Shown: piece by piece, positions 1 to 34,552 of the stretch | How positions within the stretch are numbered: the stretch's first letter is position 1 | Layout of the letters: every line of letters begins with the position of its first letter | Virus record (IMG/VR): IMGVR_UViG_3300023179_000009 | Coordinates: 372,001-436,000 of that record | Direction: 5' to 3' (one strand) | Length of the DNA: 64,000 nt | Notes under the pieces: model-generated | Database searches by the model: none | The model's input: the letters and a program-made list of their open reading frames with translations, nothing else | What the model was told of the DNA's origin: nothing | Position numbers and translations under genes: made by a program

Positions 1-96
1 AAACAAAAAAGGAAAAGCTACCAAAAGATCTAAAAGATCTAAATGAGAATGGGAACAAGGGCAAATTCCCAAAAAGTGCAATAGATTTAAAAACAT

Positions 97-17700: not shown

Positions 17701-19867
17701 AAGTTCTATGGAGTCTAGTCTGCAAAATTCTTCTAATATCATTCAAAAACAATCAGTACCAGTGGAGACAACAACCTCACTGCAAGGTGTTTTTGACAAA
17801 ACACAGGCGTCGGAGGCTTTGACCTCCAATATAGATACCGCCATCAAATGGCAGAAGATTGAGCCAAGTAGTTTGGGATCAGGTTTTGAAAAAAAATGGA
17901 ATACACTTAAAGATAATGAGTTCAATGATCTTGAATCTAAATCACCTATGAAAAGAATGTTTGGTTATGATAGATCTGAAAAACAAAATAAAATGTCTTA
18001 CCAAGGAACCGGGGCAGGTGCTGCTTTGGGTGCTGCTTTGGGTGGTCCCATTGGAATTCCCGCTGGGGCCGCTGCTGGTTTTGTCTATGATACCGTTTCT
18101 AGCAACTTAAACATACAAGATGCCTTAAGCCAAACAATATCGAATATTGGTGAAAACACCAAGGGAGTTTTGAATAGTTTAAGTTTGGGTTTATTCGATA
18201 ATGAAAAAGCAGCCGAAGCACAAGATTCTTCATTAGAATACAGTGTTAAGAATATAGCCCCAAGTTTAATTGCAGGATCACTTGCTGGGGTGACAGGTGG
18301 GATGAGTTCATTCGCACTACCAATGATCAACCAATTAATGCAAGGTCAACCCAACCAATTAATGCAAGGTCAACCCAACCAATTAATGCAAGGTCAACCA
18401 AGTGATATATTACAACAAGTTTTAACTTCTAAACAAATTAATAAACCCGAGGTTTCTAGCAATCAATTAGGTTTATTCGATAATGAAAAAGCAGCCGAAG
18501 CACAAGATTCTTCATTAGAATACAGTGTTAAGAATATAGCCCCAAGTTTAATTGCAGGATCACTTGCTGGGGTGACAGGTGGGATGAGTTCATTCGCACT
18601 ACCAATGATCAACCAATTAATGCAAGGTCAACCAAGTGATATATTACAACAAGTTTTAACTTCTAAACAAATTAATAAACCCGAGGTTTCTAGCAATCAA
18701 TTAGGTTTATTCGATAATGAAAAAGCAGCCGAAGCACAAGATTCTTCATTAGAATACAGTGTTAAGAATATAGCCCCAAGTTTAATTGCAGGATCACTTG
18801 CTGGGGTGACAGGTGGGATGAGTTCATTCGCACTACCAATGATCAACCAATTAATGCAAGGTCAACCCAACCAAAAAAATCTTGAAACAAGTGAATTATT
18901 AAAAGAAAAATTTAAAGAACCGGAAGGCTTTATCGAAGCCAACCCTCAGAGTTTGGGTGTTTTTGATTTTGAAAAAACTGGAGAGGCCGAAGAGGGTTAT
19001 TTCAAACAATTGGGTGCGAGCTATGTGGATCCAAAAGATTTTATGACCACTGCTCCAATACCAATTGTTGGTGACATTATCAATCTCTTGTCAAATGTTG
19101 GTTCTAAAATATTCGGATCAACAAAAGGATCTGTCGGGGTGTCTTCTTTGGGCATGTTTGACCCAAGCCAACCCAGCGAGGCCAATGATAGCGAATCTGA
19201 TTTGATGTTAAAAAAGATACAAGGAAGCCAAAACTTTGATTTAAATAGATACAATTTAAATGCCATAGAAAATAGTATAAAAAATAAATCAAATCTTGAA
19301 AAAAATGTTGTTTTGGAAACAAGTCGTGCTTTAGATTATGATCGTCAAGCCTCGGAGGCTGCTGATTCGGCTAAGATTAATGAATTAGATTATCGATCTG
19401 ATAAAAGGGGAGATATAGAATCTAACCCAATGGACTACACAGATGATATGGGCGATCAGTCTATTAATCCAACTTATATGGATTATCGTGATCAGATGAA
19501 AGGCGAAGTAGGCACCTTGGGAATAAGTCGATATGGCATGGAATCTGCTGTTATGCAATCGAAATACGGGGAACAACCTACAGGCAATTCATCTGTGTTG
19601 CCAAGCATGGATACTATCGCAAACTATTTAACAGGGATGCAATCTACTAAATTAGATATGATGATAAAACATTTGCAGGAAATTAGAGATCGTTTATCAA
19701 CGCAAACAACTTCCTACTCTAATGTAATTGGATCTGCCGCCTCTGGGGGCAAACCGCCAGATGCCACTGGAGTTAAATCTATAGCTCGTGATTTTGTAAG
19801 TGGCTCTTGGGATTTACCGTATGGAGACTATACATCTGGAACAGTAAACACAGAGGGGCGATTTTAG
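11750..19867 (+). CDS. tape measure-like tail protein (2705 aa)
   Basis: very long; helical N-half, G/A-rich hydrophobic segments and internal repeats; sits immediately before the baseplate genes. Confidence 0.75.
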   Translation: MATDLYGRSIGDNVSVNQVNQQLLSPTQETKRPDAQEVNNDPDKKESALENLYEAINRVAEKIDSNASKDLEESKNWSKNIIDFHKDFRNTSRSDESGQKTQTGFLDLASKAIQNLWVASQSQNTIWVGISKLSNNAVQEISKSFSMSDCCEALGEATATVRGLDNLNSGVSEASKTVLSEAGGGGRGTNWGGGDDDSDDGGDGGSRRRGDSSDASDFELPDAGDMTGVIARMSTITGLISLAANSFVDLHRSVIKALDIDPIQKIFDGQILEHNNFRESIRALIHEQEGFGASNRQIEKTFINLESSINAAGVGSAKFKTMYLKNLERGLSLATAEDNRYVDALSAQKKGFTIEQKESALRERKVNRLKSIQTTALSTASSLHMSSDAMNELFMNWHMNLGLSEQSLAEIGSHMKNVSRSTGVTGSQLEKAMISADGVMKNLKKAGMVSTDTAKRVTEFMAAAQKHGFEGAAELMNVLGGGETFHDSKYKLFLGNAARFSDKPEQGVRDLVLGNTMNRSGGMENLFGGAERFVRSQLSGFETALNSVGLKSSTLDVTNLSEVMNKLRAGGKLEEAEALKRRFKGLGIEIGEVERALKTMQEETLSSSKRIDKYSKELESMKAQGLEKTDAYKQIQKKLLEAQTGQSQDVFGRIKSVMDNKEGKTGGQLEKELKDSLIQVLGDEKAAAEWQSNLPAKASEAVSQMRERAKAEGLNFDDMLKEKGITGGESQLTKGLLEGDALSNQAMTEIMQRISKKEKQGEDPITDIKGILEEIHTTLAQKLDNVGFGLSDMIVKILYVAGYLGGILMTVASGILALRMLQNIPGLLSGISGVFGGLNKALGNPLEKIFGKGGKGPLGGLLGDCLPVCPPSGGGGQMMPRRPTGGSPVVPPSPTTGPMTTVSPSGRPKNTTVLPGGPDYGGGGWAGAQGTQYQSPTVRDAATGQVTRRDMSRSDRRANAERYLDARRAAGQSGRGFGPRAGSGIRRVAPQGKGWMGLAGKIANFAMAHPTLTGTAIGATTGAVHGYATSDEKGWGAVGDSLFEGAVGGGIGAAAGYGAGRLGGAGKGLQAGGLPGIADGAMDVVASGANMMGMPGFGSDCMPVWVCNFGEMGGMGGLLPGMGDGGMAQTALDTLNTVDMASDVAGMMGKGKNVAQVVDKADDVAKGGSWLSKMFGGGNKAATTVAGGADDVAKGGSWLSKMFGGGNKAVTAVAGGADDVAKGGSWLSKMFGGGNKAVTAVAGGADDVVKGAGLLSKIPGAGLAKGVGSLLGKVAAPLQLFTGAITGAMDAESAGRTTAEGAAYGALTGGAHKGSFASEALGIQKGSVADESLGIAGGAAWGATLGAGVGTMLAPFTAGISIPVAAAVGGVIGAGAELVKVFTAEESSMRDAVTGFASSIGSTIMELPGTIGGAFQTVGSYLGEGAHSIYASITGFASSLGSTFTSGITSVANGIGGFASSLGNSVSESFSSTAKENWDRMLQGASFSGALGQVTGGIVDVVNGNLTQGLTKVGLSGVEAFGALGQTILGAASSLNPFSWFKNKEKTSAKETESSPEKKLAETANKETQKTQQDVMTQSAEKLQEAAVGLDIGKTEQDFKAISEASSKKDIDLSNAMVASFGNVGDSKEISKALSTQNSAVFNSILAEQESLIKSISQKRDAKSSGGVTSDLGSKQGFFDSNAKGFLANAALRSSDPIAYNSLQTGTTLQTPDGVKGLMSGQEILVKEIFSGFESSLNNVGVQSATIDVGNLSEVIQKLQKGGQAEQQAATSLQRQFEALGTNVGEVENNFKIMSQSSKTPQDLLGDLSFKLNDMNKQGLQNTDEYKSIQKQTLDLQSDLQNSSDVVQKQSTPVEATTSLQGVFEKTQASEALTSNIDTAIKWQKIEPSEQTLAGELSGDSKDKNNFTVYDQSVESILFKIFDQLKSFNLTNIFEKDSSLAMMNLDHVSVVDSQKKSIENKRQFEGLDTPIRTFEQMPESLKDLSSMESSLQNSSNIIQKQSVPVETTTSLQGVFDKTQASEALTSNIDTAIKWQKIEPSSLGSGFEKKWNTLKDNEFNDLESKSPMKRMFGYDRSEKQNKMSYQGTGAGAALGAALGGPIGIPAGAAAGFVYDTVSSNLNIQDALSQTISNIGENTKGVLNSLSLGLFDNEKAAEAQDSSLEYSVKNIAPSLIAGSLAGVTGGMSSFALPMINQLMQGQPNQLMQGQPNQLMQGQPSDILQQVLTSKQINKPEVSSNQLGLFDNEKAAEAQDSSLEYSVKNIAPSLIAGSLAGVTGGMSSFALPMINQLMQGQPSDILQQVLTSKQINKPEVSSNQLGLFDNEKAAEAQDSSLEYSVKNIAPSLIAGSLAGVTGGMSSFALPMINQLMQGQPNQKNLETSELLKEKFKEPEGFIEANPQSLGVFDFEKTGEAEEGYFKQLGASYVDPKDFMTTAPIPIVGDIINLLSNVGSKIFGSTKGSVGVSSLGMFDPSQPSEANDSESDLMLKKIQGSQNFDLNRYNLNAIENSIKNKSNLEKNVVLETSRALDYDRQASEAADSAKINELDYRSDKRGDIESNPMDYTDDMGDQSINPTYMDYRDQMKGEVGTLGISRYGMESAVMQSKYGEQPTGNSSVLPSMDTIANYLTGMQSTKLDMMIKHLQEIRDRLSTQTTSYSNVIGSAASGGKPPDATGVKSIARDFVSGSWDLPYGDYTSGTVNTEGRF
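15230..15502 (+). repeat. 84-bp in-frame tandem repeat, about 3.2 copies
   Basis: units start at 15230, 15314, 15398 and 15482 and encode ADDVAKGGSWLSKMFGGGNKA(A/V)T(T/A)VAGG. Confidence 0.95.
17268..17868 (+). repeat. dispersed ~150-bp in-frame duplication
   Basis: LQNSS..QKQS.PVE.TTSLQGVF.KTQASEALTSNIDTAIKWQKIEPS occurs at ~17268-17415 and ~17720-17868, mostly with synonymous differences. Confidence 0.9.
18188..18872 (+). repeat. 234-bp in-frame tandem repeat (about 2.7 copies) with a nested 24-bp repeat
   Basis: GLFDNEKAAEAQDSS... units start at 18188, 18470 and 18704; the first unit carries two extra NQLMQGQP (24-bp) copies. Confidence 0.95.
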
Positions 19868-19880
19868 ACATAGGTGATCA

Positions 19881-20468
19881 ATGAAATCTACTATTAATGG
19901 ATCTTTAAACAAACTTCCCGATTGTTATATTGTGATACCGGGGGCCGGTCTTGTTAGCGGCAGTAAAGAAGGAATTATACCCATAGATAATTTGCCCGAC
20001 ATAGGGGACACCAAGAATGCTGTTTATAACGGTGAGCCAATACAAGGTAGAAGTTTTCCTTTATATACTTATTCCCATTCAGCGGATAGAACCATAAGTA
20101 TGACGGTTCACTTTTTTGTAGTAAATCCTGGGGATGGAGCAAAAAATTTATTATATTTAAGAATGATTCAAAGTGCGGTCTATCCAAGAAGCGGCAAAGA
20201 TTTAAATGATATTGCTCCTTATCAACCTCCACCTATTTGTAGGCTAAGGTGTGGTGATCTTCTTGATAGCAACGAGTTGTGTGTTATTTTGCAATCATAT
20301 AGTACTAAATTCCCTACAGAAGTGGCTTGGGAGGAAGAAACTTATTGCCCTTTTAGATTTAGCGTTGATTTAAGTTGGATGGTTGTTTACACATCAGAAG
20401 TTTTGCCTTTTCAAGAAGACATTATAAAAATGGCAAAAAATTCAAGAATATTCAATTCGACTAGATAG
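19881..20468 (+). CDS. tail tube initiator / baseplate tube-cap-like protein
   Basis: IQGRSFPLYTYSHSADRTISMTVHF...VYP...PPPICRLRCGD pattern typical of tube-fold proteins that follow the tape measure. Confidence 0.65.
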   Translation: MKSTINGSLNKLPDCYIVIPGAGLVSGSKEGIIPIDNLPDIGDTKNAVYNGEPIQGRSFPLYTYSHSADRTISMTVHFFVVNPGDGAKNLLYLRMIQSAVYPRSGKDLNDIAPYQPPPICRLRCGDLLDSNELCVILQSYSTKFPTEVAWEEETYCPFRFSVDLSWMVVYTSEVLPFQEDIIKMAKNSRIFNSTR

Positions 20469-20479
20469 GATAACTTAAT

Positions 20480-20803
20480 ATGAGTCAAATAGTAGAGTCA
20501 ACTGGCGTGGAGTCAAAACAATTTATGGCTCCAGGTAGTCGCTATCTCAAAAGCACCCCTATTTATTATGGAGAAAAAAAAATAATTACTTTTGATCTCT
20601 ACAACAGGTCTAACTATAATAAAACTGGCAATGAACAGGTTATGTTGATCACAAAAGGTGTTGAATATAGGCCAGATTTGGTTTCTTATGATGTTTATGG
20701 GTTTGTGGATAATTGGTGGATGATACTTGAAGTTAATAATATGAAAGATATATGGGATTTTAAAGCAGGCACCACCATTATTCTGCCCAATAGAATTTAC
20801 TGA
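20480..20803 (+). CDS. baseplate wedge protein, T4 gp53/LysM-like
   Basis: RPDLVSYDVYGFVDNWWMILEVNN...AGTTIILP. Confidence 0.8.
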   Translation: MSQIVESTGVESKQFMAPGSRYLKSTPIYYGEKKIITFDLYNRSNYNKTGNEQVMLITKGVEYRPDLVSYDVYGFVDNWWMILEVNNMKDIWDFKAGTTIILPNRIY

Positions 20804-20810
20804 GGTTGCT

Positions 20811-22421
20811 ATGAGTTTAATTTTGTGCGGAGGTGGCGAAAATTTCACGGCTGGCTTAGTGCCAAGAACCGATTGTATAGAGAAATATAGATCTCCAGGA
20901 TCACCTTATAAGTTTCCAGAGACTGGTTTTTCTTTGGCCCCATGGGTCGCAATTGATTTTGTTGACCAATCTTATCAAGGAGGCGGAGCGGCAATTACAG
21001 TTAGTAACAGGTCTTCTGAGGTTACAAATCCAAAAAATTGCGCTGTTATTAAGAGTTTTACTTTGGGACACACAGACGGTACTGATTGTCGAGTTGTAAT
21101 TCACGATACACAAGGTGGTGTTTTTGAAGAATTTATGAAGCACCTTGTTAAGGACTGGTATTGTTTAAAAGACGCAAACCCAGCAGCTTTGTTGATGAAA
21201 GTGCAATTTGGTTGGGTTAAAAGTAATTGCCAAAATGAGATTCCCGTGTCGAGATCCCCTTGTTATTTTATAATGGTTTCAAATGTCGAAGCAAATTTTG
21301 CCGAGGGCAAAATCATGTTTGAACTAACCGGGCAGGATAGTTGCAATTATATGTTTAACGGCAGTGTTTCTGGGGAAAAAGGAGGGACGGGAGCGTCTTC
21401 GATGTATCTTCTAGACGCTTTACAAGAAACTCTATGTAAAGGAGACCCCCCAAATATCGGCTCTGTTAGCTTCAGAATACCCACAGGGCGTAATAATTAT
21501 GAAATATCGGGTAGAGATGATGTATTTAAAATTGACAATCCACAAGCAGAGTATCCCGATGAAAAAAAACGTGGTCCCGCTGGCAAATGGTTGCCTCAAG
21601 GAAGAAATAAATTAGATGTTGCTTGCGCTTGGGTCACAGAAAGTTTATCTAAGAATGGTAAAGCCTGGGTGCCAAGGTATGACAGTACATCTGAAAAAGG
21701 AGAATTAATTTTTTGGGAAGCATCAAAATCTGATTGCGAAAACCAATCTGATGACTATTGGGACAGATATAACTTGGGGTCTTATATTGTAAACGGCTCA
21801 AAATCAAGTCCTGTTTTAGAGTTTAATCCAAAAATAAAATGGGATTTTGGATTAATTACGGGAAATGGCGGAAATTCCGGTGATGATCGATTAAATTCAA
21901 TGGGAACAGAGGGTGCAAAAAATCCAGGTCTTGAATGCCCTTCTTTATCTGCTGATAAAGTAAAAGGATCTGGAAATTCTACAACCACTAATAAAACAGA
22001 GTCTCAACAAGACCGAGGCGATAATGATAAAAAAGTAGCTGAGACGGACGCAAAACATAAAAAAACTCTTGAAATCAGCCACGGTCCTTTTGATGCCGAT
22101 TTAATTGTTGTAGGAGATCCAACATTTTGCCCTGCATTTCAAGCTGTTGGTGTTATGTCTATATCTATAATATTAATTAATCCTTATCATATAGTCCCAG
22201 CAAATGCTAGTTGTGGCGAATGGTTGTCGCAACCAGTGTGTAATCCAATTCTTAGTAATAAAGCTTGGATAATAAAAGGTGTCGGACACACAATTGAAGC
22301 AGGGAAATACTCTACTAGAATAAGTGTAACGCTCCCCGTACCCGGCCTTAATCACAAAAAATCTAATGATGGGGGAAGATTGGGAGCTTGGACCGATGGC
22401 TGGAAGCCGCCTACTTGTTAA
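20811..22421 (+). CDS. baseplate hub protein (gp27/gpD-like)
   Basis: KVQFGW, ADLIVVGDP, WIIKGVGHTIEAGKYST; lies between the gp53-like and gp5-like genes. Confidence 0.6.
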   Translation: MSLILCGGGENFTAGLVPRTDCIEKYRSPGSPYKFPETGFSLAPWVAIDFVDQSYQGGGAAITVSNRSSEVTNPKNCAVIKSFTLGHTDGTDCRVVIHDTQGGVFEEFMKHLVKDWYCLKDANPAALLMKVQFGWVKSNCQNEIPVSRSPCYFIMVSNVEANFAEGKIMFELTGQDSCNYMFNGSVSGEKGGTGASSMYLLDALQETLCKGDPPNIGSVSFRIPTGRNNYEISGRDDVFKIDNPQAEYPDEKKRGPAGKWLPQGRNKLDVACAWVTESLSKNGKAWVPRYDSTSEKGELIFWEASKSDCENQSDDYWDRYNLGSYIVNGSKSSPVLEFNPKIKWDFGLITGNGGNSGDDRLNSMGTEGAKNPGLECPSLSADKVKGSGNSTTTNKTESQQDRGDNDKKVAETDAKHKKTLEISHGPFDADLIVVGDPTFCPAFQAVGVMSISIILINPYHIVPANASCGEWLSQPVCNPILSNKAWIIKGVGHTIEAGKYSTRISVTLPVPGLNHKKSNDGGRLGAWTDGWKPPTC

Positions 22422-22456
22422 TATTATTTTTACAAACAAAAGAAAGATTTAATACT

Positions 22457-24709
22457 ATGTCTCTAAACCAGAATAGTCCATTCACGCCATCGCAATCCAA
22501 CTCGGCAGATTTTTCTAAATTAATGGATAGCGTTTTTAATAGATTGTTTTCTTTGGAACAAGCCGTAAATGCAATTGGCTATAGCAGCAAAGCCTCAAAA
22601 AAAAGAAGATTTCCCCAACGTAGACAAGCAAACATTGTGCAAAATTTAACCAGGGCCCTTTGTGTCGAGACTGTTGATCCTTGGAAAATTAATCGTGTGA
22701 GATACTTTCATCCTCTGCTTCATGACCCAAAATCAAATTTGTTTTCCCTACCTTTTGCTAAACCAATTTCTGCCATGGGTGGTTTTGATGATTGTGGTTT
22801 AAACTGGGTTCCACCTGCTGGTAGTACTATTATGATTTTGTTTGAATCTGGGAACGTTGACTCTGCATTTTATCTAGGAACAGCTTGGAGTAAAGATCGA
22901 AGGCCCGGTGGACAAGATATAATGGACATTTTTCCTTCTCGTGAATGGCAGCGTGTTTATCAAGGACACAGAAAGGGATATTTGGTTGGACCAGACGACG
23001 AGTCTCAAGTTTACCCTCCCTGGAACACAGAATCTTACAACGGAAGCGACATTTACGATATTAAAAAATTTGTTTTTGACCCCAATGAACAAAAAAGAAC
23101 AACTTATCCAAACATTTATGGATTCAAAACTCCCGAAAAACATATGTTAAAAATGGTTGACGGGAACGCAAAATGTAACAGGAGATGGAAAAGACTGGAG
23201 ATAATGTCGGGTTGTGGAAATTGGATGATCTTCAAGGATGATCACCTTCATTACGGTGGCCAGTGGGCACATCCAAGTTGCCCTCCGGACCCTGGTGGGG
23301 GTAATGTTGATGTCTGTTCTATACACCAAGATAGACTTCCTTATTTTAGTAATTTCCATGGAGAACCTATCGAGAAGGGTGCTGGTTGCGAACCAAATTG
23401 CGAAGGAAAAAGCAAAACTCAATGTTCTAGAATTTTGGGAGGACACACTTCTACTCCATGCGACCCAGAGACAAAATATTGCAAATCTCAAGGTGGTGCG
23501 AATCCTTTTTTTAAACATAAAAATGAATGTCGTCCATATAAGGGACCACAAACTCCACAAAACAACAAATGTGATTTGCCGCAATCAGGCATTCAATTTT
23601 TATCCATATCTGGTCACACTTGGGTAATGGACGACTCTGTGGAGGAACCCAAGGGTAAGCCTGAGTGGGAGCGAAGTATGCAACCTTTTGATTTTGGTTG
23701 TAGCGATTTATTTCAAGGAAGAACATATTGGAAAAGTGCAACTGGTCATTCGATAATGATGAGCGATGTTGAGAAAAAAGGCTTATGCACAGGAGGAAAG
23801 CCAGGAAGGCCAAATATAAATTATATTAAACTTCTCTCTGCTTCGGGAAATAGAATAGAGTTAAACGATCACACAATTCCGGTGTGTAGGGGCGGAGAAG
23901 ATCGTGGAATTCACATGCAAAGCACATCAAACCATGTGATTAAAATGATCGATCATTTAGTTAGTCAATGTTCTCCTTGTAGGCGTGAAGGCGGAAAACC
24001 AATTCCAAATGCAACAAGAGCATATATTCAAATAAGATCAGGGTACGGACTGGAAATGAGATATAATGACGACTTCAGTCAACAAACAACACAAAAACAA
24101 TGGATACAAATTTTGCACCCACAATGTGTTAGTCCTCAGTCCGACAAGGCTTGTAATTCTCTACCGAGTTGTGGATACAGGGGACCGCATATTTTAAGAT
24201 TTCAAGGTCGCCCCAAGGGTCAAGCTGGTTGCATTTATCTCCGGGCTGGAGGTCATTCGGTTCGTCAAACTTATGATTTTGACGTTGTTTTAGTTGGCGA
24301 CAAAGAATGTAATCCTTCCGATAAAATTACTTATGTTTCAAGAAAACATATTAGGGGTTGCGAAGATGTGGACTTTAGATATTCCGGGAAAAGACACGTT
24401 TTTTTTGCGGAGAAAAGAATTTTATTACTTGCTGGACGAGATTGCCCGCCCAAGCCTCCTAAAAAATGCAAAGGTCCATGTGTTTATAGTGTTATAATAG
24501 CACGATGTCCTGTTATATGTCCGTTAACTGGTATCGTTCATTGGACCCAAAAATCAATGAGCGAAAGAGTTTTTGCCTCTGGTTGGCATCCGTGTCCTGC
24601 TTGTTTGCCTTGTAGGATACCTGGATGTGAACACCCAGAGCCAGAGCCACCGAATGTAAAGATAGACACAGGTATAGGTATAATAGAAGTAAATAATAAC
24701 GTTGATTAA
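22457..24709 (+). CDS. central spike protein (gp5/VgrG/GpV OB-fold), Cys-rich
   Basis: DPWKINRVR, WVPPAGSTIMILFESGNVDSAFYLG OB-fold signature, repeated S.SGH...MDD beta-helix units; start set at MSLNQ. Confidence 0.75.
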   Translation: MSLNQNSPFTPSQSNSADFSKLMDSVFNRLFSLEQAVNAIGYSSKASKKRRFPQRRQANIVQNLTRALCVETVDPWKINRVRYFHPLLHDPKSNLFSLPFAKPISAMGGFDDCGLNWVPPAGSTIMILFESGNVDSAFYLGTAWSKDRRPGGQDIMDIFPSREWQRVYQGHRKGYLVGPDDESQVYPPWNTESYNGSDIYDIKKFVFDPNEQKRTTYPNIYGFKTPEKHMLKMVDGNAKCNRRWKRLEIMSGCGNWMIFKDDHLHYGGQWAHPSCPPDPGGGNVDVCSIHQDRLPYFSNFHGEPIEKGAGCEPNCEGKSKTQCSRILGGHTSTPCDPETKYCKSQGGANPFFKHKNECRPYKGPQTPQNNKCDLPQSGIQFLSISGHTWVMDDSVEEPKGKPEWERSMQPFDFGCSDLFQGRTYWKSATGHSIMMSDVEKKGLCTGGKPGRPNINYIKLLSASGNRIELNDHTIPVCRGGEDRGIHMQSTSNHVIKMIDHLVSQCSPCRREGGKPIPNATRAYIQIRSGYGLEMRYNDDFSQQTTQKQWIQILHPQCVSPQSDKACNSLPSCGYRGPHILRFQGRPKGQAGCIYLRAGGHSVRQTYDFDVVLVGDKECNPSDKITYVSRKHIRGCEDVDFRYSGKRHVFFAEKRILLLAGRDCPPKPPKKCKGPCVYSVIIARCPVICPLTGIVHWTQKSMSERVFASGWHPCPACLPCRIPGCEHPEPEPPNVKIDTGIGIIEVNNNVD

Positions 24710-24712
24710 ATT

Positions 24713-25141
24713 ATGACAAATAGTAGTAAATTTTTAGGATTGCAATATCCACTTGTAAAAACGCCAAGAGGCATCATGGCCCAAAAAACTGGTGTTGATC
24801 AAATTAAAGCTGATTTATTGCAACTTTTGTTAACAAATCCCGGAGAAAGAGTTATGTTGCCAACATATGGAACTCCTTTAAGGGAATTGTTTTTTGAACC
24901 AAATGATAAAACTCTAGAATCAAAAGCAAGACAAATAATAGCCGAATCGATCATCACCTGGGAGCCTAGAATAGTTGTATCAGATATACAAGTGACTTCA
25001 AATGCTCCCAAATCTTCGTTAAATCAATATGATTCTTTTGATGAAAAAGATGCTATCTTATATATAAGCATAAAATTTATAGACCCGGAAAATATCCAAT
25101 CTGTTGAAGAATTAGTGTTAGAAAGGCCCGTTGGTGCTTAA
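24713..25141 (+). CDS. baseplate wedge / sheath initiator (gp25/GpW)
   Basis: IKADLLQLLLTNPGERVMLPTYGTPLRELFFEP...WEPRI. Confidence 0.92.
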   Translation: MTNSSKFLGLQYPLVKTPRGIMAQKTGVDQIKADLLQLLLTNPGERVMLPTYGTPLRELFFEPNDKTLESKARQIIAESIITWEPRIVVSDIQVTSNAPKSSLNQYDSFDEKDAILYISIKFIDPENIQSVEELVLERPVGA

Positions 25142-25143
25142 TT

Positions 25144-26700
25144 ATGGCTTATGAAAATTGTCCTTTTGATGTAACCCCTTATGATCAATCTAACTTGGTT
25201 AAAGTTCCCAATCTTGTAAACTTGAATTATACAAATCAAGATTTTTGGTCAATGAAATCCAGACTGGTTTCTTTCATAAAAGAAAAGTTTGCTGATTCTT
25301 TTAATGACTTTGTAGAGTCAGACTTGGCCATTATGCTCATTGAAAATTGGGCTTTTATTGCTGATACCCTGAGTTTTAAGATGGATCAAATAGCGAATGA
25401 AATATTTATAGACACGGTGAGCGAGGTTGATAACGCCTTTCGTTTAAGTTTGTTGGTGGGATTTAAACCTCAGCCGCCGATAGGATCAAGATCCTTATGG
25501 TCTGCAACAATAAATAATGTTCTAGAGACAGACCTGGACATACCAACCCCGTTGCAGATTCCTTTTAACTCAGAACAGGGTCAAAGATATATTGAGCTTT
25601 TTGCAGCAGATGAGAACAACCAACCTATTTTTGGCCAAAACATTTACATACAAGCAGGTTCTTTTTTGACAACAGCCATAGTAGGTGTCGAAGGTCAAAC
25701 TTTTGAGCAAAATGCAAGAGGAACCGGTGAGTCAAATCAATTTATTAGTTTGCCACAAGGCCCAGTTCTTTCAAATTCCATAAAGGTATCGGTGGATGGC
25801 AATGAGTGGACACAGGTCGAGTATTTTTCAGAGTCTCAACCCAAAAAAGAATTTAGAGTTGAGTATAACACAATTTACAACGCTTTTATAATTTTTGGAA
25901 ACAATCGTGCTGGACAAATACCTTCTTTGAACGCAGATATTCGTGTTTCGTATCGAGTGGGAGGTGGTGTAGTTGGAAATATAGTCACTGGGTCGGTTGA
26001 GGTTCAAAAAAATTATATTGTTCCAGGTTTTGATTTTAGAGTTCCTGTGACTTTTAGAAATTACACCAAAGGTGAATTTGGTTATGCTGGTGATGGAATC
26101 GATGATATAAAAAGAAAATTACCACACTGGCTTAGGACACAAAATAGGGTTGTGTCCGGTGACGATATTGAAGCTTTTGCAAATCAGTTTTCAACTGACT
26201 ATAATGGACAGATTGGAAAAGCCAAAGCAGTTTTGAGAAATTATGGGTGTGCCGCAAATGTGATTGATCTTTATATTTTAGCAAGACAAGATCAAGACAA
26301 TCTTGTGATCTCAGATAATGGTTTAAAAGTTGAATTGCTAGAATCTTTAGATAATAAAAAAATGATGACGGACCTTATTTGTATCAAAGATGGATCTATT
26401 ATAGAAGTTGATGTTGCGATTGACATAACTATGGATAAATTTTATAGAAAATTTGAAGAAGAATTTTTAGAAAAAATAAATCGTCGTGTTAATAATTTTT
26501 TTCTTTTAAATAATTGGGATTATGGAAAGACTCTAAACGCTGTTGATCTGATTAAAACCACCTCGGATGTTCCTGAAATAAGACAGGTTGAGGTAAATTT
26601 AAATACTTCAAATGAATCTAACTCAGGTCTTGTTGTTACAACAAAATTTTATGAAATTATAAGACCAGCCAATATAGAAATCAACTTTATTTACGAATAA
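25144..26700 (+). CDS. baseplate wedge protein (gp6/baseplate J-like)
   Basis: YTNQDFWSMK, FNDFVESD, FGNNRAGQIP, YRVGGG..GN, RTQNRVVS.DD. Confidence 0.88.
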   Translation: MAYENCPFDVTPYDQSNLVKVPNLVNLNYTNQDFWSMKSRLVSFIKEKFADSFNDFVESDLAIMLIENWAFIADTLSFKMDQIANEIFIDTVSEVDNAFRLSLLVGFKPQPPIGSRSLWSATINNVLETDLDIPTPLQIPFNSEQGQRYIELFAADENNQPIFGQNIYIQAGSFLTTAIVGVEGQTFEQNARGTGESNQFISLPQGPVLSNSIKVSVDGNEWTQVEYFSESQPKKEFRVEYNTIYNAFIIFGNNRAGQIPSLNADIRVSYRVGGGVVGNIVTGSVEVQKNYIVPGFDFRVPVTFRNYTKGEFGYAGDGIDDIKRKLPHWLRTQNRVVSGDDIEAFANQFSTDYNGQIGKAKAVLRNYGCAANVIDLYILARQDQDNLVISDNGLKVELLESLDNKKMMTDLICIKDGSIIEVDVAIDITMDKFYRKFEEEFLEKINRRVNNFFLLNNWDYGKTLNAVDLIKTTSDVPEIRQVEVNLNTSNESNSGLVVTTKFYEIIRPANIEINFIYE

Positions 26701-26709
26701 CGGACCAAA

Positions 26710-29700
26710 ATGGCACTAAAAAAAATAAATGAAAATCCAAAAATAACCGACGTTATTCTAATTGAGATCGAAACACCTGGAGTTGACGGGTGTTTTACAA
26801 ATAACCCTTATAAAGTGGATAATTTGACAATTTATTATGTTGAACGTGATTTCATGGGAGATAATTTTGGGGAATACTCCTCAGAGGTTGTTGATGATAA
26901 TTTAAAAGTTAAGTTAAAAAAAGCCGAAGAGGAATTTTGCGGGAACCCTAATTTAGATAATCTAAATAAATTAGAAAAAATAAAAACGGAGATCTACTCC
27001 GCCACACAAAGAAATACTTTTTATTACAAAGACCGATCAATTGTAAAGCAAGTTGGTTCGCCATCTTTCCCAGCTTGGTTGTCAACTGACACCGATAATG
27101 CTTATTTGCAATTAAAAGAAAATCAATATGGAAGTTTTTATTACGAATGGGATCCAAAAGGTCACGCAAGAGAAGGCGACTATTTTATTTGTTGGACTTG
27201 GACCCCAATTCCAGATGGAGAAAAGTTATCTGCTCATTTGCATTTTTTTGTTGAAGGTGATGGAGCAGCCGTTTCCGCCACTCCTGCACACGTAACGCCA
27301 AAAGATAAATATGAAACTTTATTGGAACGCTATCTTCCAGAAGTCTACAAATACACTCTTTCAAATAACGATATAACCCCCCAAGTAACAGAAAGACTCA
27401 ATCAGTCTGTTGCTAAAGGTTTTACTTTTTTGGAGGATATGGCAAATCAATTAATAGATTTATTCGATGCCAATGCCCTGCACGAATCTTTATTAAATTA
27501 TCTTTCCAATCTTTTCGCAATCAAACTGAGGTCGAGTGATCCAACTTTGTGGAGAAGACAAATAAAAGAAGCAATCCCTTTATTCAAAAAAAAGGGAACT
27601 TTAGACGGTTTAAAACAAGCTTTTACACAATCCGGGATGGTTTTAAATTCGTATGTTCAATATTGGCAAATTACCTCTCCGTATACATGGATTCAAGTTT
27701 TTAAGGTAAAAGACAGTGTAAGTTTTATTTTAGAAAAAGATAATATCGTATCATTTAATAGTCAAAATTTTAAGTTATGGTTAAAAAGAGAAGGGCAAGA
27801 ATACACGGAAGTTTCCTTTGATAATGTATCGTTTAGTTCTGGAGAAGACGGTTTAATTCGAATGACATGGGTTGGGGATCAGTTGTCCACAAACAGGCTG
27901 GATTTATATGAAAATGATAAAATTAAATTGCAATATCAATATCATCCAATAAATTCTAATAATGAACAAAATATAGAAAATTATATACAAATGCTCCCTT
28001 TGATGGATCAAAGAAACGAAGACGATCAGGATTATCCTCCCAAAAATTGGAACGTTAAACTAATTGCCGAAGACGATCCGATGTTCTCGGTTTTAATTCC
28101 TGTTAGGCATCCATTTGCTGACCCTCTCCAATTCGGTTGGGTCAGAACTGAATTTGCTTACTCTGAAAATGTTTATAACGCAGAAGAGTATAATGGTTCC
28201 ACTAGACCTTCTTTTGATGCTTGTCGTATAGATAAAGAATTTATAGATCCATGCAGGGCTTGTTTAAGTAGTTCGTATAGTTTGGATGTCGGCATTGAAG
28301 AACTCTCCAATGACAGAATTTTAGAAGCACAAGATATACTTCGAGAATATGTTCCTTTTCACGCTCAACTATACTCAATTGGATTTACAGGAGAGGTAAA
28401 TGAATTTGTTCAATCGCCAGTTGAGAAGATAGAAACATTGGTTACATTAGATTATTCTCAATTTATTTTATCCGGGAACTCAAACCCATTTTTTACTAGA
28501 AATTTAGAAAAAGGATCAAGCAATTATTTTATTACAAGAGAAGACCTTACCGATCAAGTCACAGTTTTGTCTGGTAAGATTGGCGTGGCTTATAATGATC
28601 ATATAAAAATAATAATCCCCGATTACAATCTTAAAAGTTTAGGGTTAAATGTCCAAAATCATATTTTGGAAGTATTATCCCCATCCGTTAATGTTGGGAC
28701 ATATACTATTGATGAAATAGAGGGAAACACAGCAAAAGTTACATCTTATGTTAACGAACCCCTAGATAAAACAGCCTTTACTTTTAATTTGTCAAATATT
28801 ATTTACGGAAACACAAACTCTTCAATATTTCAAAGAGATTTAGTAAAATTAAATGATTTAAAGAATGATATAATAAAATATTCAATAAAGACTGTTTGGC
28901 ATAGGGAATTTGATGATTATGAAGGAGAAGTTTATAAAATTTTAATTCCTTCGTATTCAAACGTAGCTTTTGATATAGAACAAATTTTGGACGGAAACAT
29001 TATTATCAAAAATGATAGTTTTGTTTTCTCTAATGCAACAAACGTAAATTATTCTATAATTGATGATTCGGGAGAAGTGATACTCAATAGTAATTTTGGC
29101 AATTTATTTGTAGAAAAAAGAGGTCTAGTAAACTTTAACGATTCTGCAATTTTGAATATAAATGATTTTGTAAAAATTGGCGATTTTTTATATTACAATC
29201 AACAAGAGTTCATCATATCTGAAATATCCGACAACAGTTTTTATATTAAAAATTATTTAAGTGGCGATGCAGTAGGAGTTTCTGTACACAATAGAAGAAG
29301 GTTAATTGTTAACGGAGTTGGTTTTTTTGGCTATAAAGGACTTAATTTAAAAACTCAATTTGATCATGAATCAGAGTTTGAGATGATGAATGGCAAAAAC
29401 AGGCCGATTGACGAAAACGAAATCTTACAAGAAAATTCATTTATTCAAAATTTTATGTTTAAAATTGGAGAAGAATTTTATAAAATTACCTCTATTAATA
29501 AAACAGATGTGGTTTTAAATGGTCGAGAACAAGACTGGACTACTTTGAATTTTGGCGGAGAACCAGTGGATTATTCTATAATTAAGTTTCCTAAAAAACA
29601 AATAAACGTAGGATTTACTGTGTTTAGTGGCCTAGATAGAAGTGGATATGACCCTGTAATTCGTGAAATCGAATCTGAAATAGATCAGAACACGGCTACT

Positions 29701-29814
29701 GTTGCTTTGAGCATGCCAAAAAGTAGCGGTTTTCAAGAAAGTGTTTCAAACGGAGAAAATATTTTGGTTACAATTGAGTCTAAAAACGGCGAAAAAATAG
29801 AAGGTGAATTATGA
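26710..29814 (+). CDS. baseplate/tail protein (gp7/P2 gpI-like domain)
   Basis: LLNYLSNLF...RRQIKEAIPLFKKKGTLDGLK motif; YVPFH; follows gp6. Confidence 0.7.
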   Translation: MALKKINENPKITDVILIEIETPGVDGCFTNNPYKVDNLTIYYVERDFMGDNFGEYSSEVVDDNLKVKLKKAEEEFCGNPNLDNLNKLEKIKTEIYSATQRNTFYYKDRSIVKQVGSPSFPAWLSTDTDNAYLQLKENQYGSFYYEWDPKGHAREGDYFICWTWTPIPDGEKLSAHLHFFVEGDGAAVSATPAHVTPKDKYETLLERYLPEVYKYTLSNNDITPQVTERLNQSVAKGFTFLEDMANQLIDLFDANALHESLLNYLSNLFAIKLRSSDPTLWRRQIKEAIPLFKKKGTLDGLKQAFTQSGMVLNSYVQYWQITSPYTWIQVFKVKDSVSFILEKDNIVSFNSQNFKLWLKREGQEYTEVSFDNVSFSSGEDGLIRMTWVGDQLSTNRLDLYENDKIKLQYQYHPINSNNEQNIENYIQMLPLMDQRNEDDQDYPPKNWNVKLIAEDDPMFSVLIPVRHPFADPLQFGWVRTEFAYSENVYNAEEYNGSTRPSFDACRIDKEFIDPCRACLSSSYSLDVGIEELSNDRILEAQDILREYVPFHAQLYSIGFTGEVNEFVQSPVEKIETLVTLDYSQFILSGNSNPFFTRNLEKGSSNYFITREDLTDQVTVLSGKIGVAYNDHIKIIIPDYNLKSLGLNVQNHILEVLSPSVNVGTYTIDEIEGNTAKVTSYVNEPLDKTAFTFNLSNIIYGNTNSSIFQRDLVKLNDLKNDIIKYSIKTVWHREFDDYEGEVYKILIPSYSNVAFDIEQILDGNIIIKNDSFVFSNATNVNYSIIDDSGEVILNSNFGNLFVEKRGLVNFNDSAILNINDFVKIGDFLYYNQQEFIISEISDNSFYIKNYLSGDAVGVSVHNRRRLIVNGVGFFGYKGLNLKTQFDHESEFEMMNGKNRPIDENEILQENSFIQNFMFKIGEEFYKITSINKTDVVLNGREQDWTTLNFGGEPVDYSIIKFPKKQINVGFTVFSGLDRSGYDPVIREIESEIDQNTATVALSMPKSSGFQESVSNGENILVTIESKNGEKIEGEL

Positions 29815-33513: not shown

Positions 33514-33517
33514 AATT

Positions 33518-34540: not shown

Positions 34541-34552
34541 GAAAAGAGATTT

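What the first reader, a model, noticed from the sequence alone, without database searches (positions are those of the whole stretch)
19881..24709. Extremely cysteine-rich hub and spike: possible disulfide- or metal-stapled baseplate
Seen (hand counts): about 33 Cys in the ~750-aa spike and about 16 in the 536-aa hub. Cys is clustered in loops inserted between beta-helix units and in a C-terminal CPPKPPKKCKGPC...CPVICP...HPCPACLPCRIPGC tip. Several other late proteins end at or near Cys (LLRQC, KPPTC, IVPCKK, SDCKT, IRDCP), and the tape measure has DCLPVC and DCMPVWVC motifs. No lysozyme domain is visible in the spike. Inference: the virion is cross-linked by disulfides or multiple Zn/Fe sites, which is unusual for particles assembled in a reducing cytoplasm.
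Basis: partly seen in the sequence, partly recalled or inferred. Interest (0 to 1): 0.6.

Follow-up and report, generated by a model that had tools for sequence, protein, structure and literature searches.

The report
Cysteine-stapled hub and spike of a huge phage
In a 459-kb phage and several hundred relatives, the needle that pierces the host (centerpiece, hub and spike) carries conserved cysteines that are gained and lost in pairs, the signature of disulfide bonds, while the surrounding baseplate has almost none.

Summary
The counts are right: 33 Cys in the 750-aa spike (4.4%) and 16 in the 536-aa hub (3.0%). Neighbouring baseplate wedge proteins have 0-0.6%. P2 and Mu hubs and spikes have 0.3-1.5%.

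The window lies in a 458,813-bp phage record. The hub has the gp27/Mu gp44/VgrG fold. The spike has a gp5/gpV OB domain, one invariant HxH motif, a coil domain with 10 Cys in about 100 aa, a β-helix that models as a trimer, and a Cys-rich tip.

The enrichment holds in 80 related loci and in a 35%-identical relative. It is confined to the centerpiece candidate, hub and spike.

On trees, at least ten spike and two hub Cys pairs are gained or lost together on the same branches. Of 4656 column pairs, 4315 share no event. A CxxC...CxxC group splits into two independent pairs, which argues against Zn(Cys)4.

Seven thiol-redox families gave no hit in the genome.

Best reading: disulfides, probably formed after lysis, staple the piercing device, and HxH may bind iron. 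No model coordinates were available, so this rests on covariation.

The claim that the whole virion is cross-linked is not supported. This is a new variant of a known kind (phages Pam3 and Milano).

The parts
19881..20468 (+). 195-aa protein just after the tape measure. It is a candidate baseplate centerpiece or tube initiator. It has 5 Cys, four of them nearly invariant (C15, C120, C124, C134).
   Evidence: ORF and counts. Cys conservation of 0.95-1.00 in 44 homologues, with Cys the second most conserved residue type after Trp. Clade median 2.75% Cys. The functional label is only a lead: the nearest named Atlas cluster is PF11091 T4_tail_cap at score 0.93, and there is no Pfam hit.
20480..20803 (+). 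107-aa LysM-like baseplate wedge subunit (T4 gp53 class). It has no Cys and serves as an internal contrast.
   Evidence: phrog_7145 at E 1.8e-10. 0 Cys here and in all 63 homologues.
20811..22421 (+). Baseplate hub of 536 aa with the gp27/Mu gp44/VgrG-N fold and 16 Cys. Covarying pairs are C309-C376 and C118-C536, where C536 is the last residue.
   Evidence: AF2 pLDDT 80.5, pTM 0.83. Foldseek hits to CIS, VgrG, Mu gp44, T4 gp27 and Milano hubs at E 3e-10 to 1e-7, probability 1.0. Cys is the second or third most conserved residue type. Coupled events: 9 of 14/14 for C309-C376 and 5 of 7/9 for C118-C536.
22457..24709 (+). Central spike of 750 aa with 33 Cys (4.4%).
   Evidence: There are 811 homologues, on contigs of up to 691 kb.
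22655..22888 (+). Spike residues 67-144: the gp5/gpV/VgrG OB-fold domain.
   Evidence: PF04717 at E 1.8e-7, 31.9 bits against a cut-off of 23.8. The profile hits the OB domain of 9gtr_q. A local match to P2 gpV residues 59-89 has E 4e-5.
23243..23251 (+). Spike H263-L-H265, the only HxH in the protein. It is a candidate iron site, like the one in P2 gpV and Mu gp45.
   Evidence: H263 is present in 168 of 171 sequences; H265, D261 and D262 in 171 of 171. The motif DDHLHYG resembles Mu gp45 DKHIHRG. Fe binding by HxH in gpV, gp138 and gp45 is as cited in PMC10811340. Metal binding here is inferred.
23264..23572 (+). Spike residues 270-372: a coil-rich domain with 10 Cys in about 100 aa. Covarying pairs are 315-323 and 335-342, and possibly 275-358.
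   Evidence: The sequence and its conservation. pLDDT is about 80-89 with almost no regular secondary structure. Coupled events. There is no family or PDB sequence match.
23588..24436 (+). Spike residues 378-660: a repeated β-helix unit, each with a conserved His and with Cys in the inter-strand loops. Covarying pairs are 474ins-505, 474ins-508, 557-566, 569-574 (in relatives) and 572-618.
   Evidence: Strand pairs. Internal repeat HSP. VIA match to the phiKZ central spike 6orj, Z 7.8, rmsd 1.7 Å over 81 aa. The homotrimer of 420-750 scores 0.88 against a best control of 0.33. That mark was reached by 20 of 30 proteins solved as pairs and 1 of 23 solved as single chains. The runs agree in at least 62% of contacts and partner pLDDT is at least 61. 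Coupled Cys events.
24437..24706 (+). Spike residues 661-750: the Cys-rich C-terminal tip (C663, 671, 675, 684, 688, 713, 716, 719, 724).
   Evidence: Sequence. Conservation is 0.79-0.99 for most of these Cys. Coupled pairs are 671-724 (5 of 6/8), 663-675 (2 of 2/2) and 684-713 (4 of 7/16). There is no PAAR or other Pfam hit at E<=5. Residue 680 contacts itself across chains, so it lies on the axis.
24713..25141 (+). gp25-like wedge protein of 142 aa with 0 Cys. Contrast.
   Evidence: PF04965 at E 5e-19. Clade median 0% Cys.
25144..26700 (+). gp6-like wedge protein of 518 aa with 3 Cys (0.6%). Contrast.
   Evidence: phrog_10646 and phrog_219. Clade median 0.58% Cys.
26710..29814 (+). gp7/P2 gpI-like wedge protein of 1034 aa with 6 Cys (0.6%). 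Contrast.
   Evidence: PF09684 Tail_P2_I at E 1e-5. Clade median 0.77% Cys.
11750..19867 (+). Tape measure protein of 2705 aa with 6 Cys (0.2%). The DC[LM]PV..C motifs are not conserved.

Best explanation
The window carries the baseplate module of a huge myophage with a genome of about 459 kb. The inner, host-piercing assembly has three parts: a candidate centerpiece (195 aa), a gp27-fold hub (536 aa) and a 750-aa central spike. This assembly carries a clade-conserved network of cysteines, and most of them form disulfide bonds.

In the spike, these bonds are proposed to do four things:
- close the loops between rungs of the trimeric β-helix;
- hold together a 100-residue domain that has almost no regular secondary structure;
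- knot the C-terminal tip;
- in the hub, tie the last residue (C536) back to C118.

The proteins are made in the cytoplasm and no phage oxidase gene was found. The bonds most likely form by oxidation after lysis, as in phages Pam3 and Milano. They would make the needle rigid and resistant to unfolding or proteolysis in the environment.

The N-terminal third of the spike (OB fold, short β-helix, invariant HxH at 263-265) looks like a complete gpV/gp45-type spike with its iron site. On that reading, residues 266-750 are a Cys-stapled extension.

Shown: the Cys counts, their conservation, their pairwise co-evolution, the hub fold, the OB domain, a supported trimer model, and the absence of hits for seven thiol-redox families.

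Inferred: that the pairs are disulfides, when they form, what they are for, the iron site, and the modular reading.
For: Counts and background:
- 33 Cys in 750 aa and 16 in 536 aa.
- The spike is the most Cys-rich of 63 proteins of 400 aa or more; the hub is fourth.
- In P2 and Mu the hub has 0.3-0.8% Cys and the spike 1.4-1.5%.

The trait is clade-wide and part-specific:
- Medians across 80 IMG/VR loci are 2.75% (ORF195), 2.4% (hub) and 3.4% (spike).
- The same loci give 0% (LysM-like), 0% (gp25), 0.58% (gp6) and 0.77% (gp7).
- The pattern repeats in LR756511.1, at 35% spike identity. There the core Cys 69, 240, 275, 287, 311, 358, 372, 415, 505, 663, 675 and 724 are retained.

Conservation:
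- About 22 of 33 spike Cys are at least 80% conserved.
- Cys is the second most conserved residue type in the hub and in ORF195.

Pairwise coupled gain and loss on the same tree branches:
- 557-566: 4 of 4/4.
- 335-342: 4 of 4/4.
- 572-618: 9 of 10/11.
- 569-574: 8 of 11/10.
- 315-323: 27 of 32/31.
- 671-724: 5 of 6/8.
- 474ins-508: 15 of 26/21.
- 474ins-505: 8 of 14/10.
- Hub 309-376: 9 of 14/14.
- Hub 118-536: 5 of 7/9.
- Control pairs share 0-1 events, and 4315 of 4656 column pairs share none.
- Lost Cys are mostly substituted rather than deleted.

Against a single metal site:
- The CxxC...CxxC group occurs as four Cys in 73 sequences and as only one specific pair in 39.

Folds:
- Hub fold.
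- OB domain.
- Trimer model: score 0.88 against a best control of 0.33. The mark was reached by 20 of 30 solved pairs and 1 of 23 single chains. Run agreement is at least 62% and pLDDT at least 61.
- phiKZ spike match.

Other points:
- No Evr1_Alr, Thioredoxin, Thioredoxin_2, DSBA, Glutaredoxin, VKOR or DsbB match in the 458,813-bp record.
- Precedents for virion disulfides.
- HxH is invariant and resembles the Mu gp45 and P2 gpV motifs.
Against: - No Cys-Cys distance could be measured. The tools return no coordinates, and the spike monomer model is only pLDDT 64.8.
- Total Cys number per spike shows no even-number bias: 63 even against 56 odd.
- Several highly conserved Cys have no covarying partner. 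C240 never changes while C253 changes 17 times. C372 is replaced by I/L/M. C113 changes 27 times while C69 changes 5. So some Cys are free, metal-bound or bonded between chains.
- Covariation shows coupling, not chemistry.
- Host, habitat and redox conditions are unknown.
- The genome is about 91% complete. An oxidase could lie in the missing part or belong to an unrecognised family.
- The alignment of the last 40 or so residues is unstable.
Confidence: 0.6

Rival explanations
1. The cysteines are mainly metal ligands, such as Zn(Cys)4-type knuckles, Fe-S clusters, or axial sites built from two Cys per chain in the trimer. On this reading they are not disulfides.
For: - CxxxC and CxxC spacings occur: 311/315, 505/508, 671/675, 684/688 and 713/716/719.
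- ORF195 has four invariant Cys with C-x3-C-x9-C spacing.
- His is the most conserved residue type in the spike, at 0.80.
- There is no even-number bias in Cys counts.
- Metal sites fit folding in a reducing cytoplasm.
- Two Cys per chain on a threefold axis would also covary as a pair.
- Loops 556-567 and residues 504-505 lie at chain interfaces in the trimer model.
Against: - Coupling is strictly pairwise, not in groups of three or four.
- The CxxC...CxxC group splits into two independent pairs. 39 sequences keep only one pair.
- Short closed loops of i to i+5..9 (335-342, 557-566, 569-574, 315-323) are typical of disulfide loops.
- No Zn-ribbon, PAAR or Fe-S family is detected.
- C508 is replaced by K, P or I while C505 stays.
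Confidence: 0.2
2. The key cysteines form bonds between chains or between proteins. These would link spike chains into a closed trimer, or link spike to hub or hub to centerpiece, so the inner baseplate is one covalent unit.
For: - The hub's last residue C536 covaries with C118.
- Unpartnered conserved Cys exist in all three proteins.
- Several Cys-bearing loops lie at chain interfaces in the trimer model.
- Milano and Pam3 have many inter-subunit disulfides.
Against: - Cross-protein Cys covariation among 41 loci gave only clade-level correlations and no clean pair. That test was underpowered.
- Most covarying pairs are 5-9 residues apart, which suggests bonds within one chain.
Confidence: 0.15
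3. The Cys richness is compositional or neutral and has no structural role. This genome is generally Cys-rich.
For: The genome-wide mean is about 1.9% Cys, and many small ORFs exceed 4%. The hub at 3.0% is only modestly above that mean.
Against: - Conservation down to 35% identity.
- Restriction to three adjacent inner-baseplate proteins in 80 loci.
- Branch-specific pairwise coupling.
- The neighbouring Cys-rich p177 shows what neutral Cys look like: mean conservation 0.25.
Confidence: 0.03

Closest known systems
Cyanophage Pam3 baseplate (PMC9942802)
   Same: A myophage virion whose baseplate is held together by disulfides within and between subunits. This was shown by cryo-EM, mass spectrometry and DTT treatment. 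Cys-rich regions are named as docking platforms.
   Different: In Pam3 the bonds lie in the wedge (gp22/gp23) and the tail fibres. Here the wedge proteins are Cys-poor and the Cys lie in the centerpiece candidate, hub and spike. No sequence relationship was tested beyond the shared baseplate families.
Agrobacterium phage Milano disulfide network (PMC10811340)
   Same: A contractile tail with an extensive disulfide network. The central spike carries an HxH motif thought to bind Fe. The hub fold matches: 8fqc_C1 at E 8e-8.
   Different: The bonds listed for Milano are in the sheath, tube-centerpiece, wedge, tail spikes and short fibres. None is listed for the hub or central spike in the passages read. 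Here the distribution is the reverse.
Iron-loaded spikes: P2 gpV, phi92 gp138, Mu gp45
   Same: An OB fold is followed by a β-helix and an HxH motif about 120 residues downstream. The motif is DDHLHYG here, DKHIHRG in Mu gp45 and HTHKH in P2 gpV.
   Different: Those proteins end about 12-15 residues after HxH, at 197-211 aa, and have 3 Cys each. This spike continues for another 485 residues that hold about 28 Cys. Iron binding was not tested here.
T4 gp27-gp5 cell-puncturing device and T6SS VgrG
   Same: The hub fold matches (1k28_D at E 4.5e-8; VgrG chains at about E 1e-8). The spike has the OB domain, a trimeric β-helix, and a hub-spike-gp25 gene order.
   Different: No lysozyme domain, no gp5_C repeat family and no separate or fused PAAR domain is detectable. 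The hub and spike are separate genes, unlike VgrG.
phiKZ central spike (PDB 6orj)
   Same: This is the best low-rmsd structural match to the β-helix segment 433-597: Z 7.8, 1.7 Å over 81 residues. Both come from very large myophages.
   Different: Z is in the range where common arrangements occur. Sequence identity is 9% and only about 11% of the spike is covered.
Cytoplasmic disulfide pathways of poxviruses and giant viruses (Erv1/ALR oxidases)
   Same: They face the same problem, making disulfide-bonded virion proteins in a reducing cytoplasm. This comparison rests on my own knowledge.
   Different: No Evr1_Alr, thioredoxin-fold, DsbA/B or VKOR gene was found in this genome.

Membership tests
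gp27 / Mu gp44 / VgrG-N baseplate hub | The characteristic hub fold | tested here: met
   AF2 pLDDT 80.5. Foldseek probability 1.0 and E 3e-10 to 1e-7 against 7b5h_AJ, 1wru, 3d37, 1k28_D, 8fqc_C1, 6u5h_A and others. TM score by target is up to 0.63.
gp27 / Mu gp44 / VgrG-N baseplate hub | Sequence family membership (Phage_GPD or similar) | tested here: not met
   No Pfam or PHROG hit, even at E<=5. Membership rests on fold and gene position only.
gp27 / Mu gp44 / VgrG-N baseplate hub | The gene lies between the tape measure / tube initiator and the spike, upstream of gp25-like and gp6-like genes | tested here: met
   The gene order is TMP, ORF195, LysM-like, hub, spike, gp25, gp6, gp7. It is conserved in L003 and L002.
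gp5 / gpV / VgrG central spike | OB-fold domain (PF04717) | tested here: met
   E 1.8e-7, 31.9 bits, cut-off 23.8, residues 67-144.
gp5 / gpV / VgrG central spike | Homotrimeric intertwined β-helix | tested here: met
   A three-copy model of residues 420-750 scores 0.88 against a best control of 0.33. The mark was reached by 20 of 30 solved pairs and 1 of 23 single chains. Run agreement is at least 62% and pLDDT at least 61. The interface runs from 421 to 712. The phiKZ spike match has Z 7.8. This is model support only, not a measurement.
Iron-loaded spikes (gpV, gp138, gp45) | An HxH motif at the C-terminal apex that coordinates Fe | tested here: inconclusive
   A single invariant HxH is present at 263-265. 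It is not at the C-terminal tip, and the last 485 residues contain none. Metal binding cannot be tested with these tools.
T4 gp5-type spike with lysozyme | A lysozyme or other cell-wall hydrolase domain | tested here: not met
   No Pfam hit in residues 150-380 at E<=5. A profile of 22 sequences against PDB gave nothing below E 1.
PAAR tip | A PAAR-repeat domain (PF05488) that sharpens the tip and binds Zn | tested here: not met
   No Pfam hit in residues 640-750 at E<=5.
Disulfide-stabilised contractile tails (Pam3, Milano type) | Conserved Cys that behave as pairs | tested here: met
Disulfide-stabilised contractile tails (Pam3, Milano type) | Cys sulfur atoms within bonding distance in the structure | not testable with these tools
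   The prediction tools return no coordinates.
Disulfide-stabilised contractile tails (Pam3, Milano type) | Chemical proof: mass spectrometry of linked peptides, or DTT-dependent disassembly or contraction | not testable with these tools
   Experimental only.
Disulfide-stabilised contractile tails (Pam3, Milano type) | Bonds located in the wedge, sheath or fibres | tested here: not met
   The LysM-like, gp25-like, gp6-like and gp7-like proteins have 0-0.8% Cys across the clade.
Virus-encoded cytoplasmic thiol-oxidase pathway | Erv1/ALR oxidase or thioredoxin-fold partners encoded by the virus | tested here: not met
   PF04777, PF00085, PF13098, PF01323, PF00462, PF07884 and PF02600 all gave 0 matches at E<=0.1 in the 458,813-bp record. 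Control genomes were positive.
Zn(Cys)4 knuckle or ribbon | Four ligands retained or lost as one unit | tested here: not met
   For the CxxC...CxxC group, 73 sequences have all four Cys and 39 have only the 474ins-505 pair. The specific couplings are 474ins-508 (15 events) and 474ins-505 (8 events), with cross pairs sharing 2 events.

The most novel reading that the evidence does not exclude
The Cys network is a redox latch on the piercing device, not merely a stabiliser. On this reading the oxidised, covalently stapled hub-spike plug keeps the roughly 400-nm tail closed and rigid outside the cell. The tail length is my inference from the 2705-aa tape measure. Thiol-disulfide exchange would occur when the tip reaches the host's reducing compartment, loosening the Cys-held extension (residues 266-750) and the hub's C-terminal staple. 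That would release the plug and open the tube for DNA exit. This would be a clade-wide, redox-gated trigger in huge phages. It would be distinct from Pam3 and Milano, where disulfides hold the wedge, fibres and sheath.
Probability: 0.15. Interest if true: 0.7.

Novelty: new variant of a known kind. Interest (0 to 1): 0.5.

Why it matters
Disulfide-bonded phage tails have only recently been seen, in Pam3 and Milano, and there the bonds lie in the outer baseplate and sheath. Here the sequence signature of disulfides lies in the central hub-spike complex. It is conserved across several hundred uncultured huge-phage genomes: 811 spike homologues, on contigs of up to 691 kb.

If confirmed, three things would follow:
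- The membrane-piercing tip of these very large, long-tailed phages is covalently stapled.
- There would be a concrete set of residue pairs to test by mutagenesis and mass spectrometry.
- It would raise the question of how and when bonds form in proteins made in the cytoplasm, given that no phage oxidase gene was found.

The work also suggests a modular reading of the spike: a gpV-like core with an iron motif, plus a 485-residue Cys-stapled extension of unknown fold family. This could guide structural work on huge phages.

Tried and rejected
1. **Enzyme in the spike mid-domain.** The HLH motif suggested an M23 peptidase, and a lysozyme was also considered. There was no Pfam hit at E<=5 and no PDB profile hit below E 1. 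I dropped the idea.
2. **PAAR or Zn-ribbon tip.** No hit.
3. **Foldseek with the spike monomer model.** The PDB and viral libraries gave only MORN/OspA-like single-layer sheets. That is what one chain of an intertwined trimer is expected to give, so the result is not informative.
4. **Phage-encoded thiol oxidase or thioredoxin-fold proteins.** Seven families were searched, with no match.
5. **Cys at protein C-termini as a general feature.** The count is at chance genome-wide.
6. **TMP DC[LM]PV motifs.** They are not conserved in relatives.
7. **p177 (31115-31648) as part of the network.** Its Cys are not conserved, with a mean of 0.25.
8. **Cross-protein Cys covariation between spike, hub and ORF195.** Only clade-level correlations appeared among 41 loci. 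The test was underpowered and gave no conclusion.
10. **Host inference.** The spike family occurs in only 3 MAG contigs of the genome collection. One is a 546-kb contig, so these are probably binned phage, and they give no host signal. A search for the accession LR756511 in the paper library found nothing.
11. **Identity of the 440-aa ORF 9210-10532.** No Pfam, PHROG, PDB or Atlas lead.
12. **Model coordinates.** None are written to the Python box, so Cys-Cys distances could not be computed.

No alternative genetic code was needed.

Full report
**What the region is**

The window is bases 372001-436000 of a single 458,813-bp virus record, about 91% complete by CheckV. GC is about 33-35%, and it reads cleanly in table 11. 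The flagged stretch is the inner part of a contractile-tail baseplate module, in this order:
- a 2705-aa tape measure protein (11750-19867);
- a 195-aa ORF (19881-20468);
- a 107-aa LysM-like wedge subunit (20480-20803; phrog_7145, E 1.8e-10);
- a 536-aa protein (20811-22421);
- a 750-aa protein (22457-24709; the listed ORF starts at TTG 22388, but all homologues start at the ATG);
- a gp25-like protein (24713-25141; PF04965, E 5e-19);
- a gp6-like protein (25144-26700);
- a gp7/P2 gpI-like protein (26710-29814; PF09684).

The same order is found in a 686-kb JGI contig and in the 595-kb uncultured phage LR756511.1.

**Checking the observation**

The hand counts are exact: 33 Cys in the 750-aa spike (4.4%) and 16 in the 536-aa hub (3.0%). 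The quoted C-terminal strings are at spike residues 663-724.

Three backgrounds were used for comparison.
- My crude ORF set gives a genome mean of 1.9% Cys. The spike is the most Cys-rich of 63 proteins of 400 aa or more, and the hub is fourth.
- The neighbouring tail proteins are Cys-poor: TMP 0.2%, LysM-like 0%, gp25-like 0%, gp6-like 0.6%, gp7-like 0.6%.
- As an outside baseline, the hubs of P2 and Mu have 0.3-0.8% and their spikes 1.4-1.5%, three Cys each.

In the AF2 model, 29 of 33 spike Cys lie outside helices and strands, compared with 71% of all residues.

Two side claims do not hold as general statements.
- Cys within the last six residues is at chance genome-wide: 50 observed against 55.8 +/- 7.1 expected. 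In the window it is 11 against 5.5 +/- 2.2.
- The TMP motifs DCLPVC and DCMPVWVC are absent from relatives' TMPs.

**Identity of the proteins**

The 536-aa protein has no Pfam or PHROG match. With 44 homologues it folds well, at pLDDT 80.5 and pTM 0.83. Foldseek then finds the hubs of contractile injection systems, VgrG, Mu gp44, T4 gp27, R-pyocin and Milano at probability 1.0 and E 3e-10 to 1e-7.

The 750-aa protein contains the gp5/gpV/VgrG OB domain: PF04717, residues 67-144, 31.9 bits against a cut-off of 23.8. Nothing else in it is recognisable by sequence.

The monomer model is mediocre, at pLDDT 64.8, as expected for one chain of an intertwined trimer. It does show a series of strand pairs from about 378 to 660. 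An internal BLAST match reveals the repeat: a conserved His, then hydrophobic-x-hydrophobic-x-D, then a loop, then x-S-G-x-G...D-D.

VIA-align finds the phiKZ central spike (6orj) at Z 7.8, with 1.7 Å rmsd over 81 residues.

A three-copy model of residues 420-750 scored 0.88 against a best control of 0.33.
- The mark was reached by 20 of 30 proteins solved as pairs of one chain and by 1 of 23 solved as single chains.
- The runs agree in at least 62% of contacts, and partner pLDDT is at least 61.
- My own alignment was used and a Zn rode along, so the calibration holds only roughly.
- The interface runs along the whole stretch 421-712, and residue 680 touches itself across chains.

This supports a trimeric β-helix but does not prove one.

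The 195-aa ORF is only tentatively a centerpiece or tube initiator. The nearest named Atlas cluster carries PF11091 T4_tail_cap at score 0.93, which is a lead only.

**The trait is clade-wide and part-specific**

The spike has 811 homologues in the word-indexed database, on contigs of up to 691 kb. There are 330 matches in IMG/VR. Only three occur among 185,579 prokaryote genomes, and one of those is a 546-kb contig, so this is a phage-only family.

Orthologues were extracted from 80 related loci. Median Cys content was:
- 2.75% for ORF195;
- 2.4% for the hub;
- 3.4% for the spike;
- 0% for the LysM-like protein;
- 0% for gp25;
- 0.58% for gp6;
- 0.77% for gp7.

LR756511.1 has a spike only 35% identical and shows the same split: 3.8%, 0%, 3.1%, 3.0%, 0%, 0.8%, 0.8%. 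It keeps spike Cys 69, 240, 275, 287, 311, 358, 372, 415, 505, 663, 675 and 724.

**Conservation and pairing**

In 119 spike homologues of 55-80% identity, about 22 of 33 Cys are at least 80% conserved. The figures are similar in 171 sequences reaching down to 47% identity.

In the faster-evolving hub (32-67% identity), Cys is the second most conserved residue type after Trp. In ORF195 four Cys are 95-100% conserved.

The variable Cys are the informative ones, because they appear and disappear in specific pairs. Using FastTree trees and Fitch parsimony, I counted changes that fall on the same branch in the same direction. In the spike:
- 557-566: 4 of 4/4;
- 335-342: 4 of 4/4;
- 572-618: 9 of 10/11;
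- 569-574 (present in relatives): 8 of 11/10;
- 315-323: 27 of 32/31, partly reflecting loop deletion;
- 671-724: 5 of 6/8;
- two Cys in an insertion near residue 474 pair with C508 (15 of 26/21) and with C505 (8 of 14/10);
- 663-675: 2 of 2/2;
- 684-713: 4 of 7/16.

In the hub:
- 309-376: 9 of 14/14;
- 118-536: 5 of 7/9.

Eight deliberately mismatched control pairs shared 0-1 events. Of all 4656 pairs of variable Cys columns, 4315 shared none and only 20 shared four or more (the hub is). Where a pair is missing, the residues are mostly substituted rather than deleted.

**Disulfide or metal?**

Pairwise coupling is what disulfides predict. A Cys4 or Cys3His site should be kept or lost as one unit.

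The best test case is the CxxC...CxxC group, made of the 474 insertion plus C505-x-x-C508.
- 73 sequences have all four Cys.
- 39 have only the 474ins-505 pair.
- Each insertion Cys couples to one specific partner: 15 and 8 events, against 2 for the crossed combinations.

This fits two independent bonds and does not fit a zinc knuckle.

Several pairs close short loops of 5-9 residues. The segment 270-372 has 10 Cys in about 100 residues, almost no regular secondary structure, and yet pLDDT of 80-89. That is how small disulfide-rich domains behave.

There are caveats.
- Cys totals show no even-number bias: 63 even, 56 odd.
- Several highly conserved Cys lack a covarying partner, including C240 and C113. 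C372 is replaced by I/L/M.
- So some Cys are free, bonded between chains, or metal ligands.

**A separate metal candidate**

The spike has exactly one HxH motif, D261-D262-H263-L-H265-Y-G. It is invariant in 168-171 of 171 sequences. It resembles the motif at the C-terminal apex of Mu gp45 (DKHIHRG at 183-185 of 197 aa) and P2 gpV (HTHKH at 195-199 of 211 aa). In those proteins it coordinates iron, as cited in PMC10811340.

Its distance from the OB fold is similar to that in gpV and gp45. I therefore read residues 1 to about 265 as a complete gpV-like spike. Residues 266-750 would be a Cys-stapled extension made of the coil domain, a second β-helix and a knotted tip. This is inference.

**How the bonds would form, and what they would do**

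Seven thiol-redox families (Evr1_Alr, Thioredoxin, Thioredoxin_2, DSBA, Glutaredoxin, VKOR and DsbB) gave no match at E<=0.1 in the genome. Control genomes were positive.

The most economical reading is that the thiols are held in position by folding and assembly in the cytoplasm, and oxidise after lysis. Published cryo-EM and mass-spectrometry work shows disulfides in virions of Pam3 (wedge and fibres; DTT detaches fibres and triggers contraction) and Milano (sheath, wedge, fibres).

What differs here is the location. The bonds would lie in the inner, host-piercing assembly rather than the periphery. The likely benefit is rigidity and resistance to unfolding or proteolysis for a needle that sits at the end of a very long tail. 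A 2705-aa tape measure implies a tail of about 400 nm at about 1.5 Å per residue, which is my own estimate. A redox-triggered release of the plug is possible but untested.

**Verdict**

The idea of a whole-virion cross-link, the C-terminal-Cys idea and the TMP motifs are not supported.

I found no description of a Cys-stapled hub-spike in the paper library. I class it as a new variant of a known kind.

**Not done**

The second costly protein search and the representative search were not needed.

Noticed in passing
window 9210-10532 (+): This 440-aa ORF lies upstream of the tape measure and has no recognisable family. There is no Pfam, PHROG, PDB or Atlas lead. It ends in Cys as its very last residue in all 11 homologues recovered from related loci at 47-75% identity (…RQC, RNC, RFC, RTC, KQC). 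A conserved terminal Cys suggests a covalent link or metal contact of its own.
   Followed up: partly
window 43617-44630 (+): A full-length match to Pfam Volactin (PF25216, E 4.8e-69, positions 1-321 of 321) with a weaker MreB_Mbl hit. This is an actin-like cytoskeletal protein encoded by a huge phage.
   Followed up: no
P0021 (70%-identical spike homologue), against window spike residues 422/423 (about window 23720-23725): A relative's spike gene carries an insert of about 350 aa with intein and homing-endonuclease domains (PF14528, PF14890). It sits between R422 and T423, just before the highly conserved TYWKSATGH repeat.
   Followed up: partly
window 11750-19867 (TMP); aa 150-151 is about window 12197-12202: TMPs across the clade carry vicinal CC or CxC doublets, such as SDCCEAL, SNCCGAT, RQCCARD, DCGLC and ACAC, even though TMPs are otherwise nearly Cys-free. 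The window TMP also has near-perfect tandem repeats: an 84-bp unit x3.3 at 15230-15503 and a 234-bp unit x2.1 at 18376-18867. It includes a 50% GC Gly/Pro-rich segment at about 14-16 kb in a genome of about 33% GC.
   Followed up: partly
window 49288-49611 (+): A 107-aa protein with a DUF3008 domain (PF11450, E 2e-6). It has 13 Cys (12%), and its C-terminus ends …CKNCKCENCTCN, which looks metallothionein-like.
   Followed up: no
window 11219-11719 (+): A 166-aa ORF just before the tape measure matches phrog_429 'DNA end protector' (E 1e-7). This is an unexpected position for such a gene.
   Followed up: no
window 33449-36841 (+): Two adjacent proteins of 363 and 762 aa carry PKD domains (PF18911 at E 2e-23 and 2e-12). 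They are probably fibre or decoration proteins downstream of the baseplate.
   Followed up: no
window 31115-31648 (+): A 177-aa protein with 7 Cys (4.0%), and 2.8% median in relatives. Its Cys are poorly conserved (mean 0.25), so Cys richness alone does not mark the conserved network.
   Followed up: yes
whole genome G000: Predicted proteins average about 1.9% Cys on my crude ORF calls, which is high for a phage. Many small ORFs at genome positions of about 290-323 kb exceed 5% Cys.
   Followed up: no
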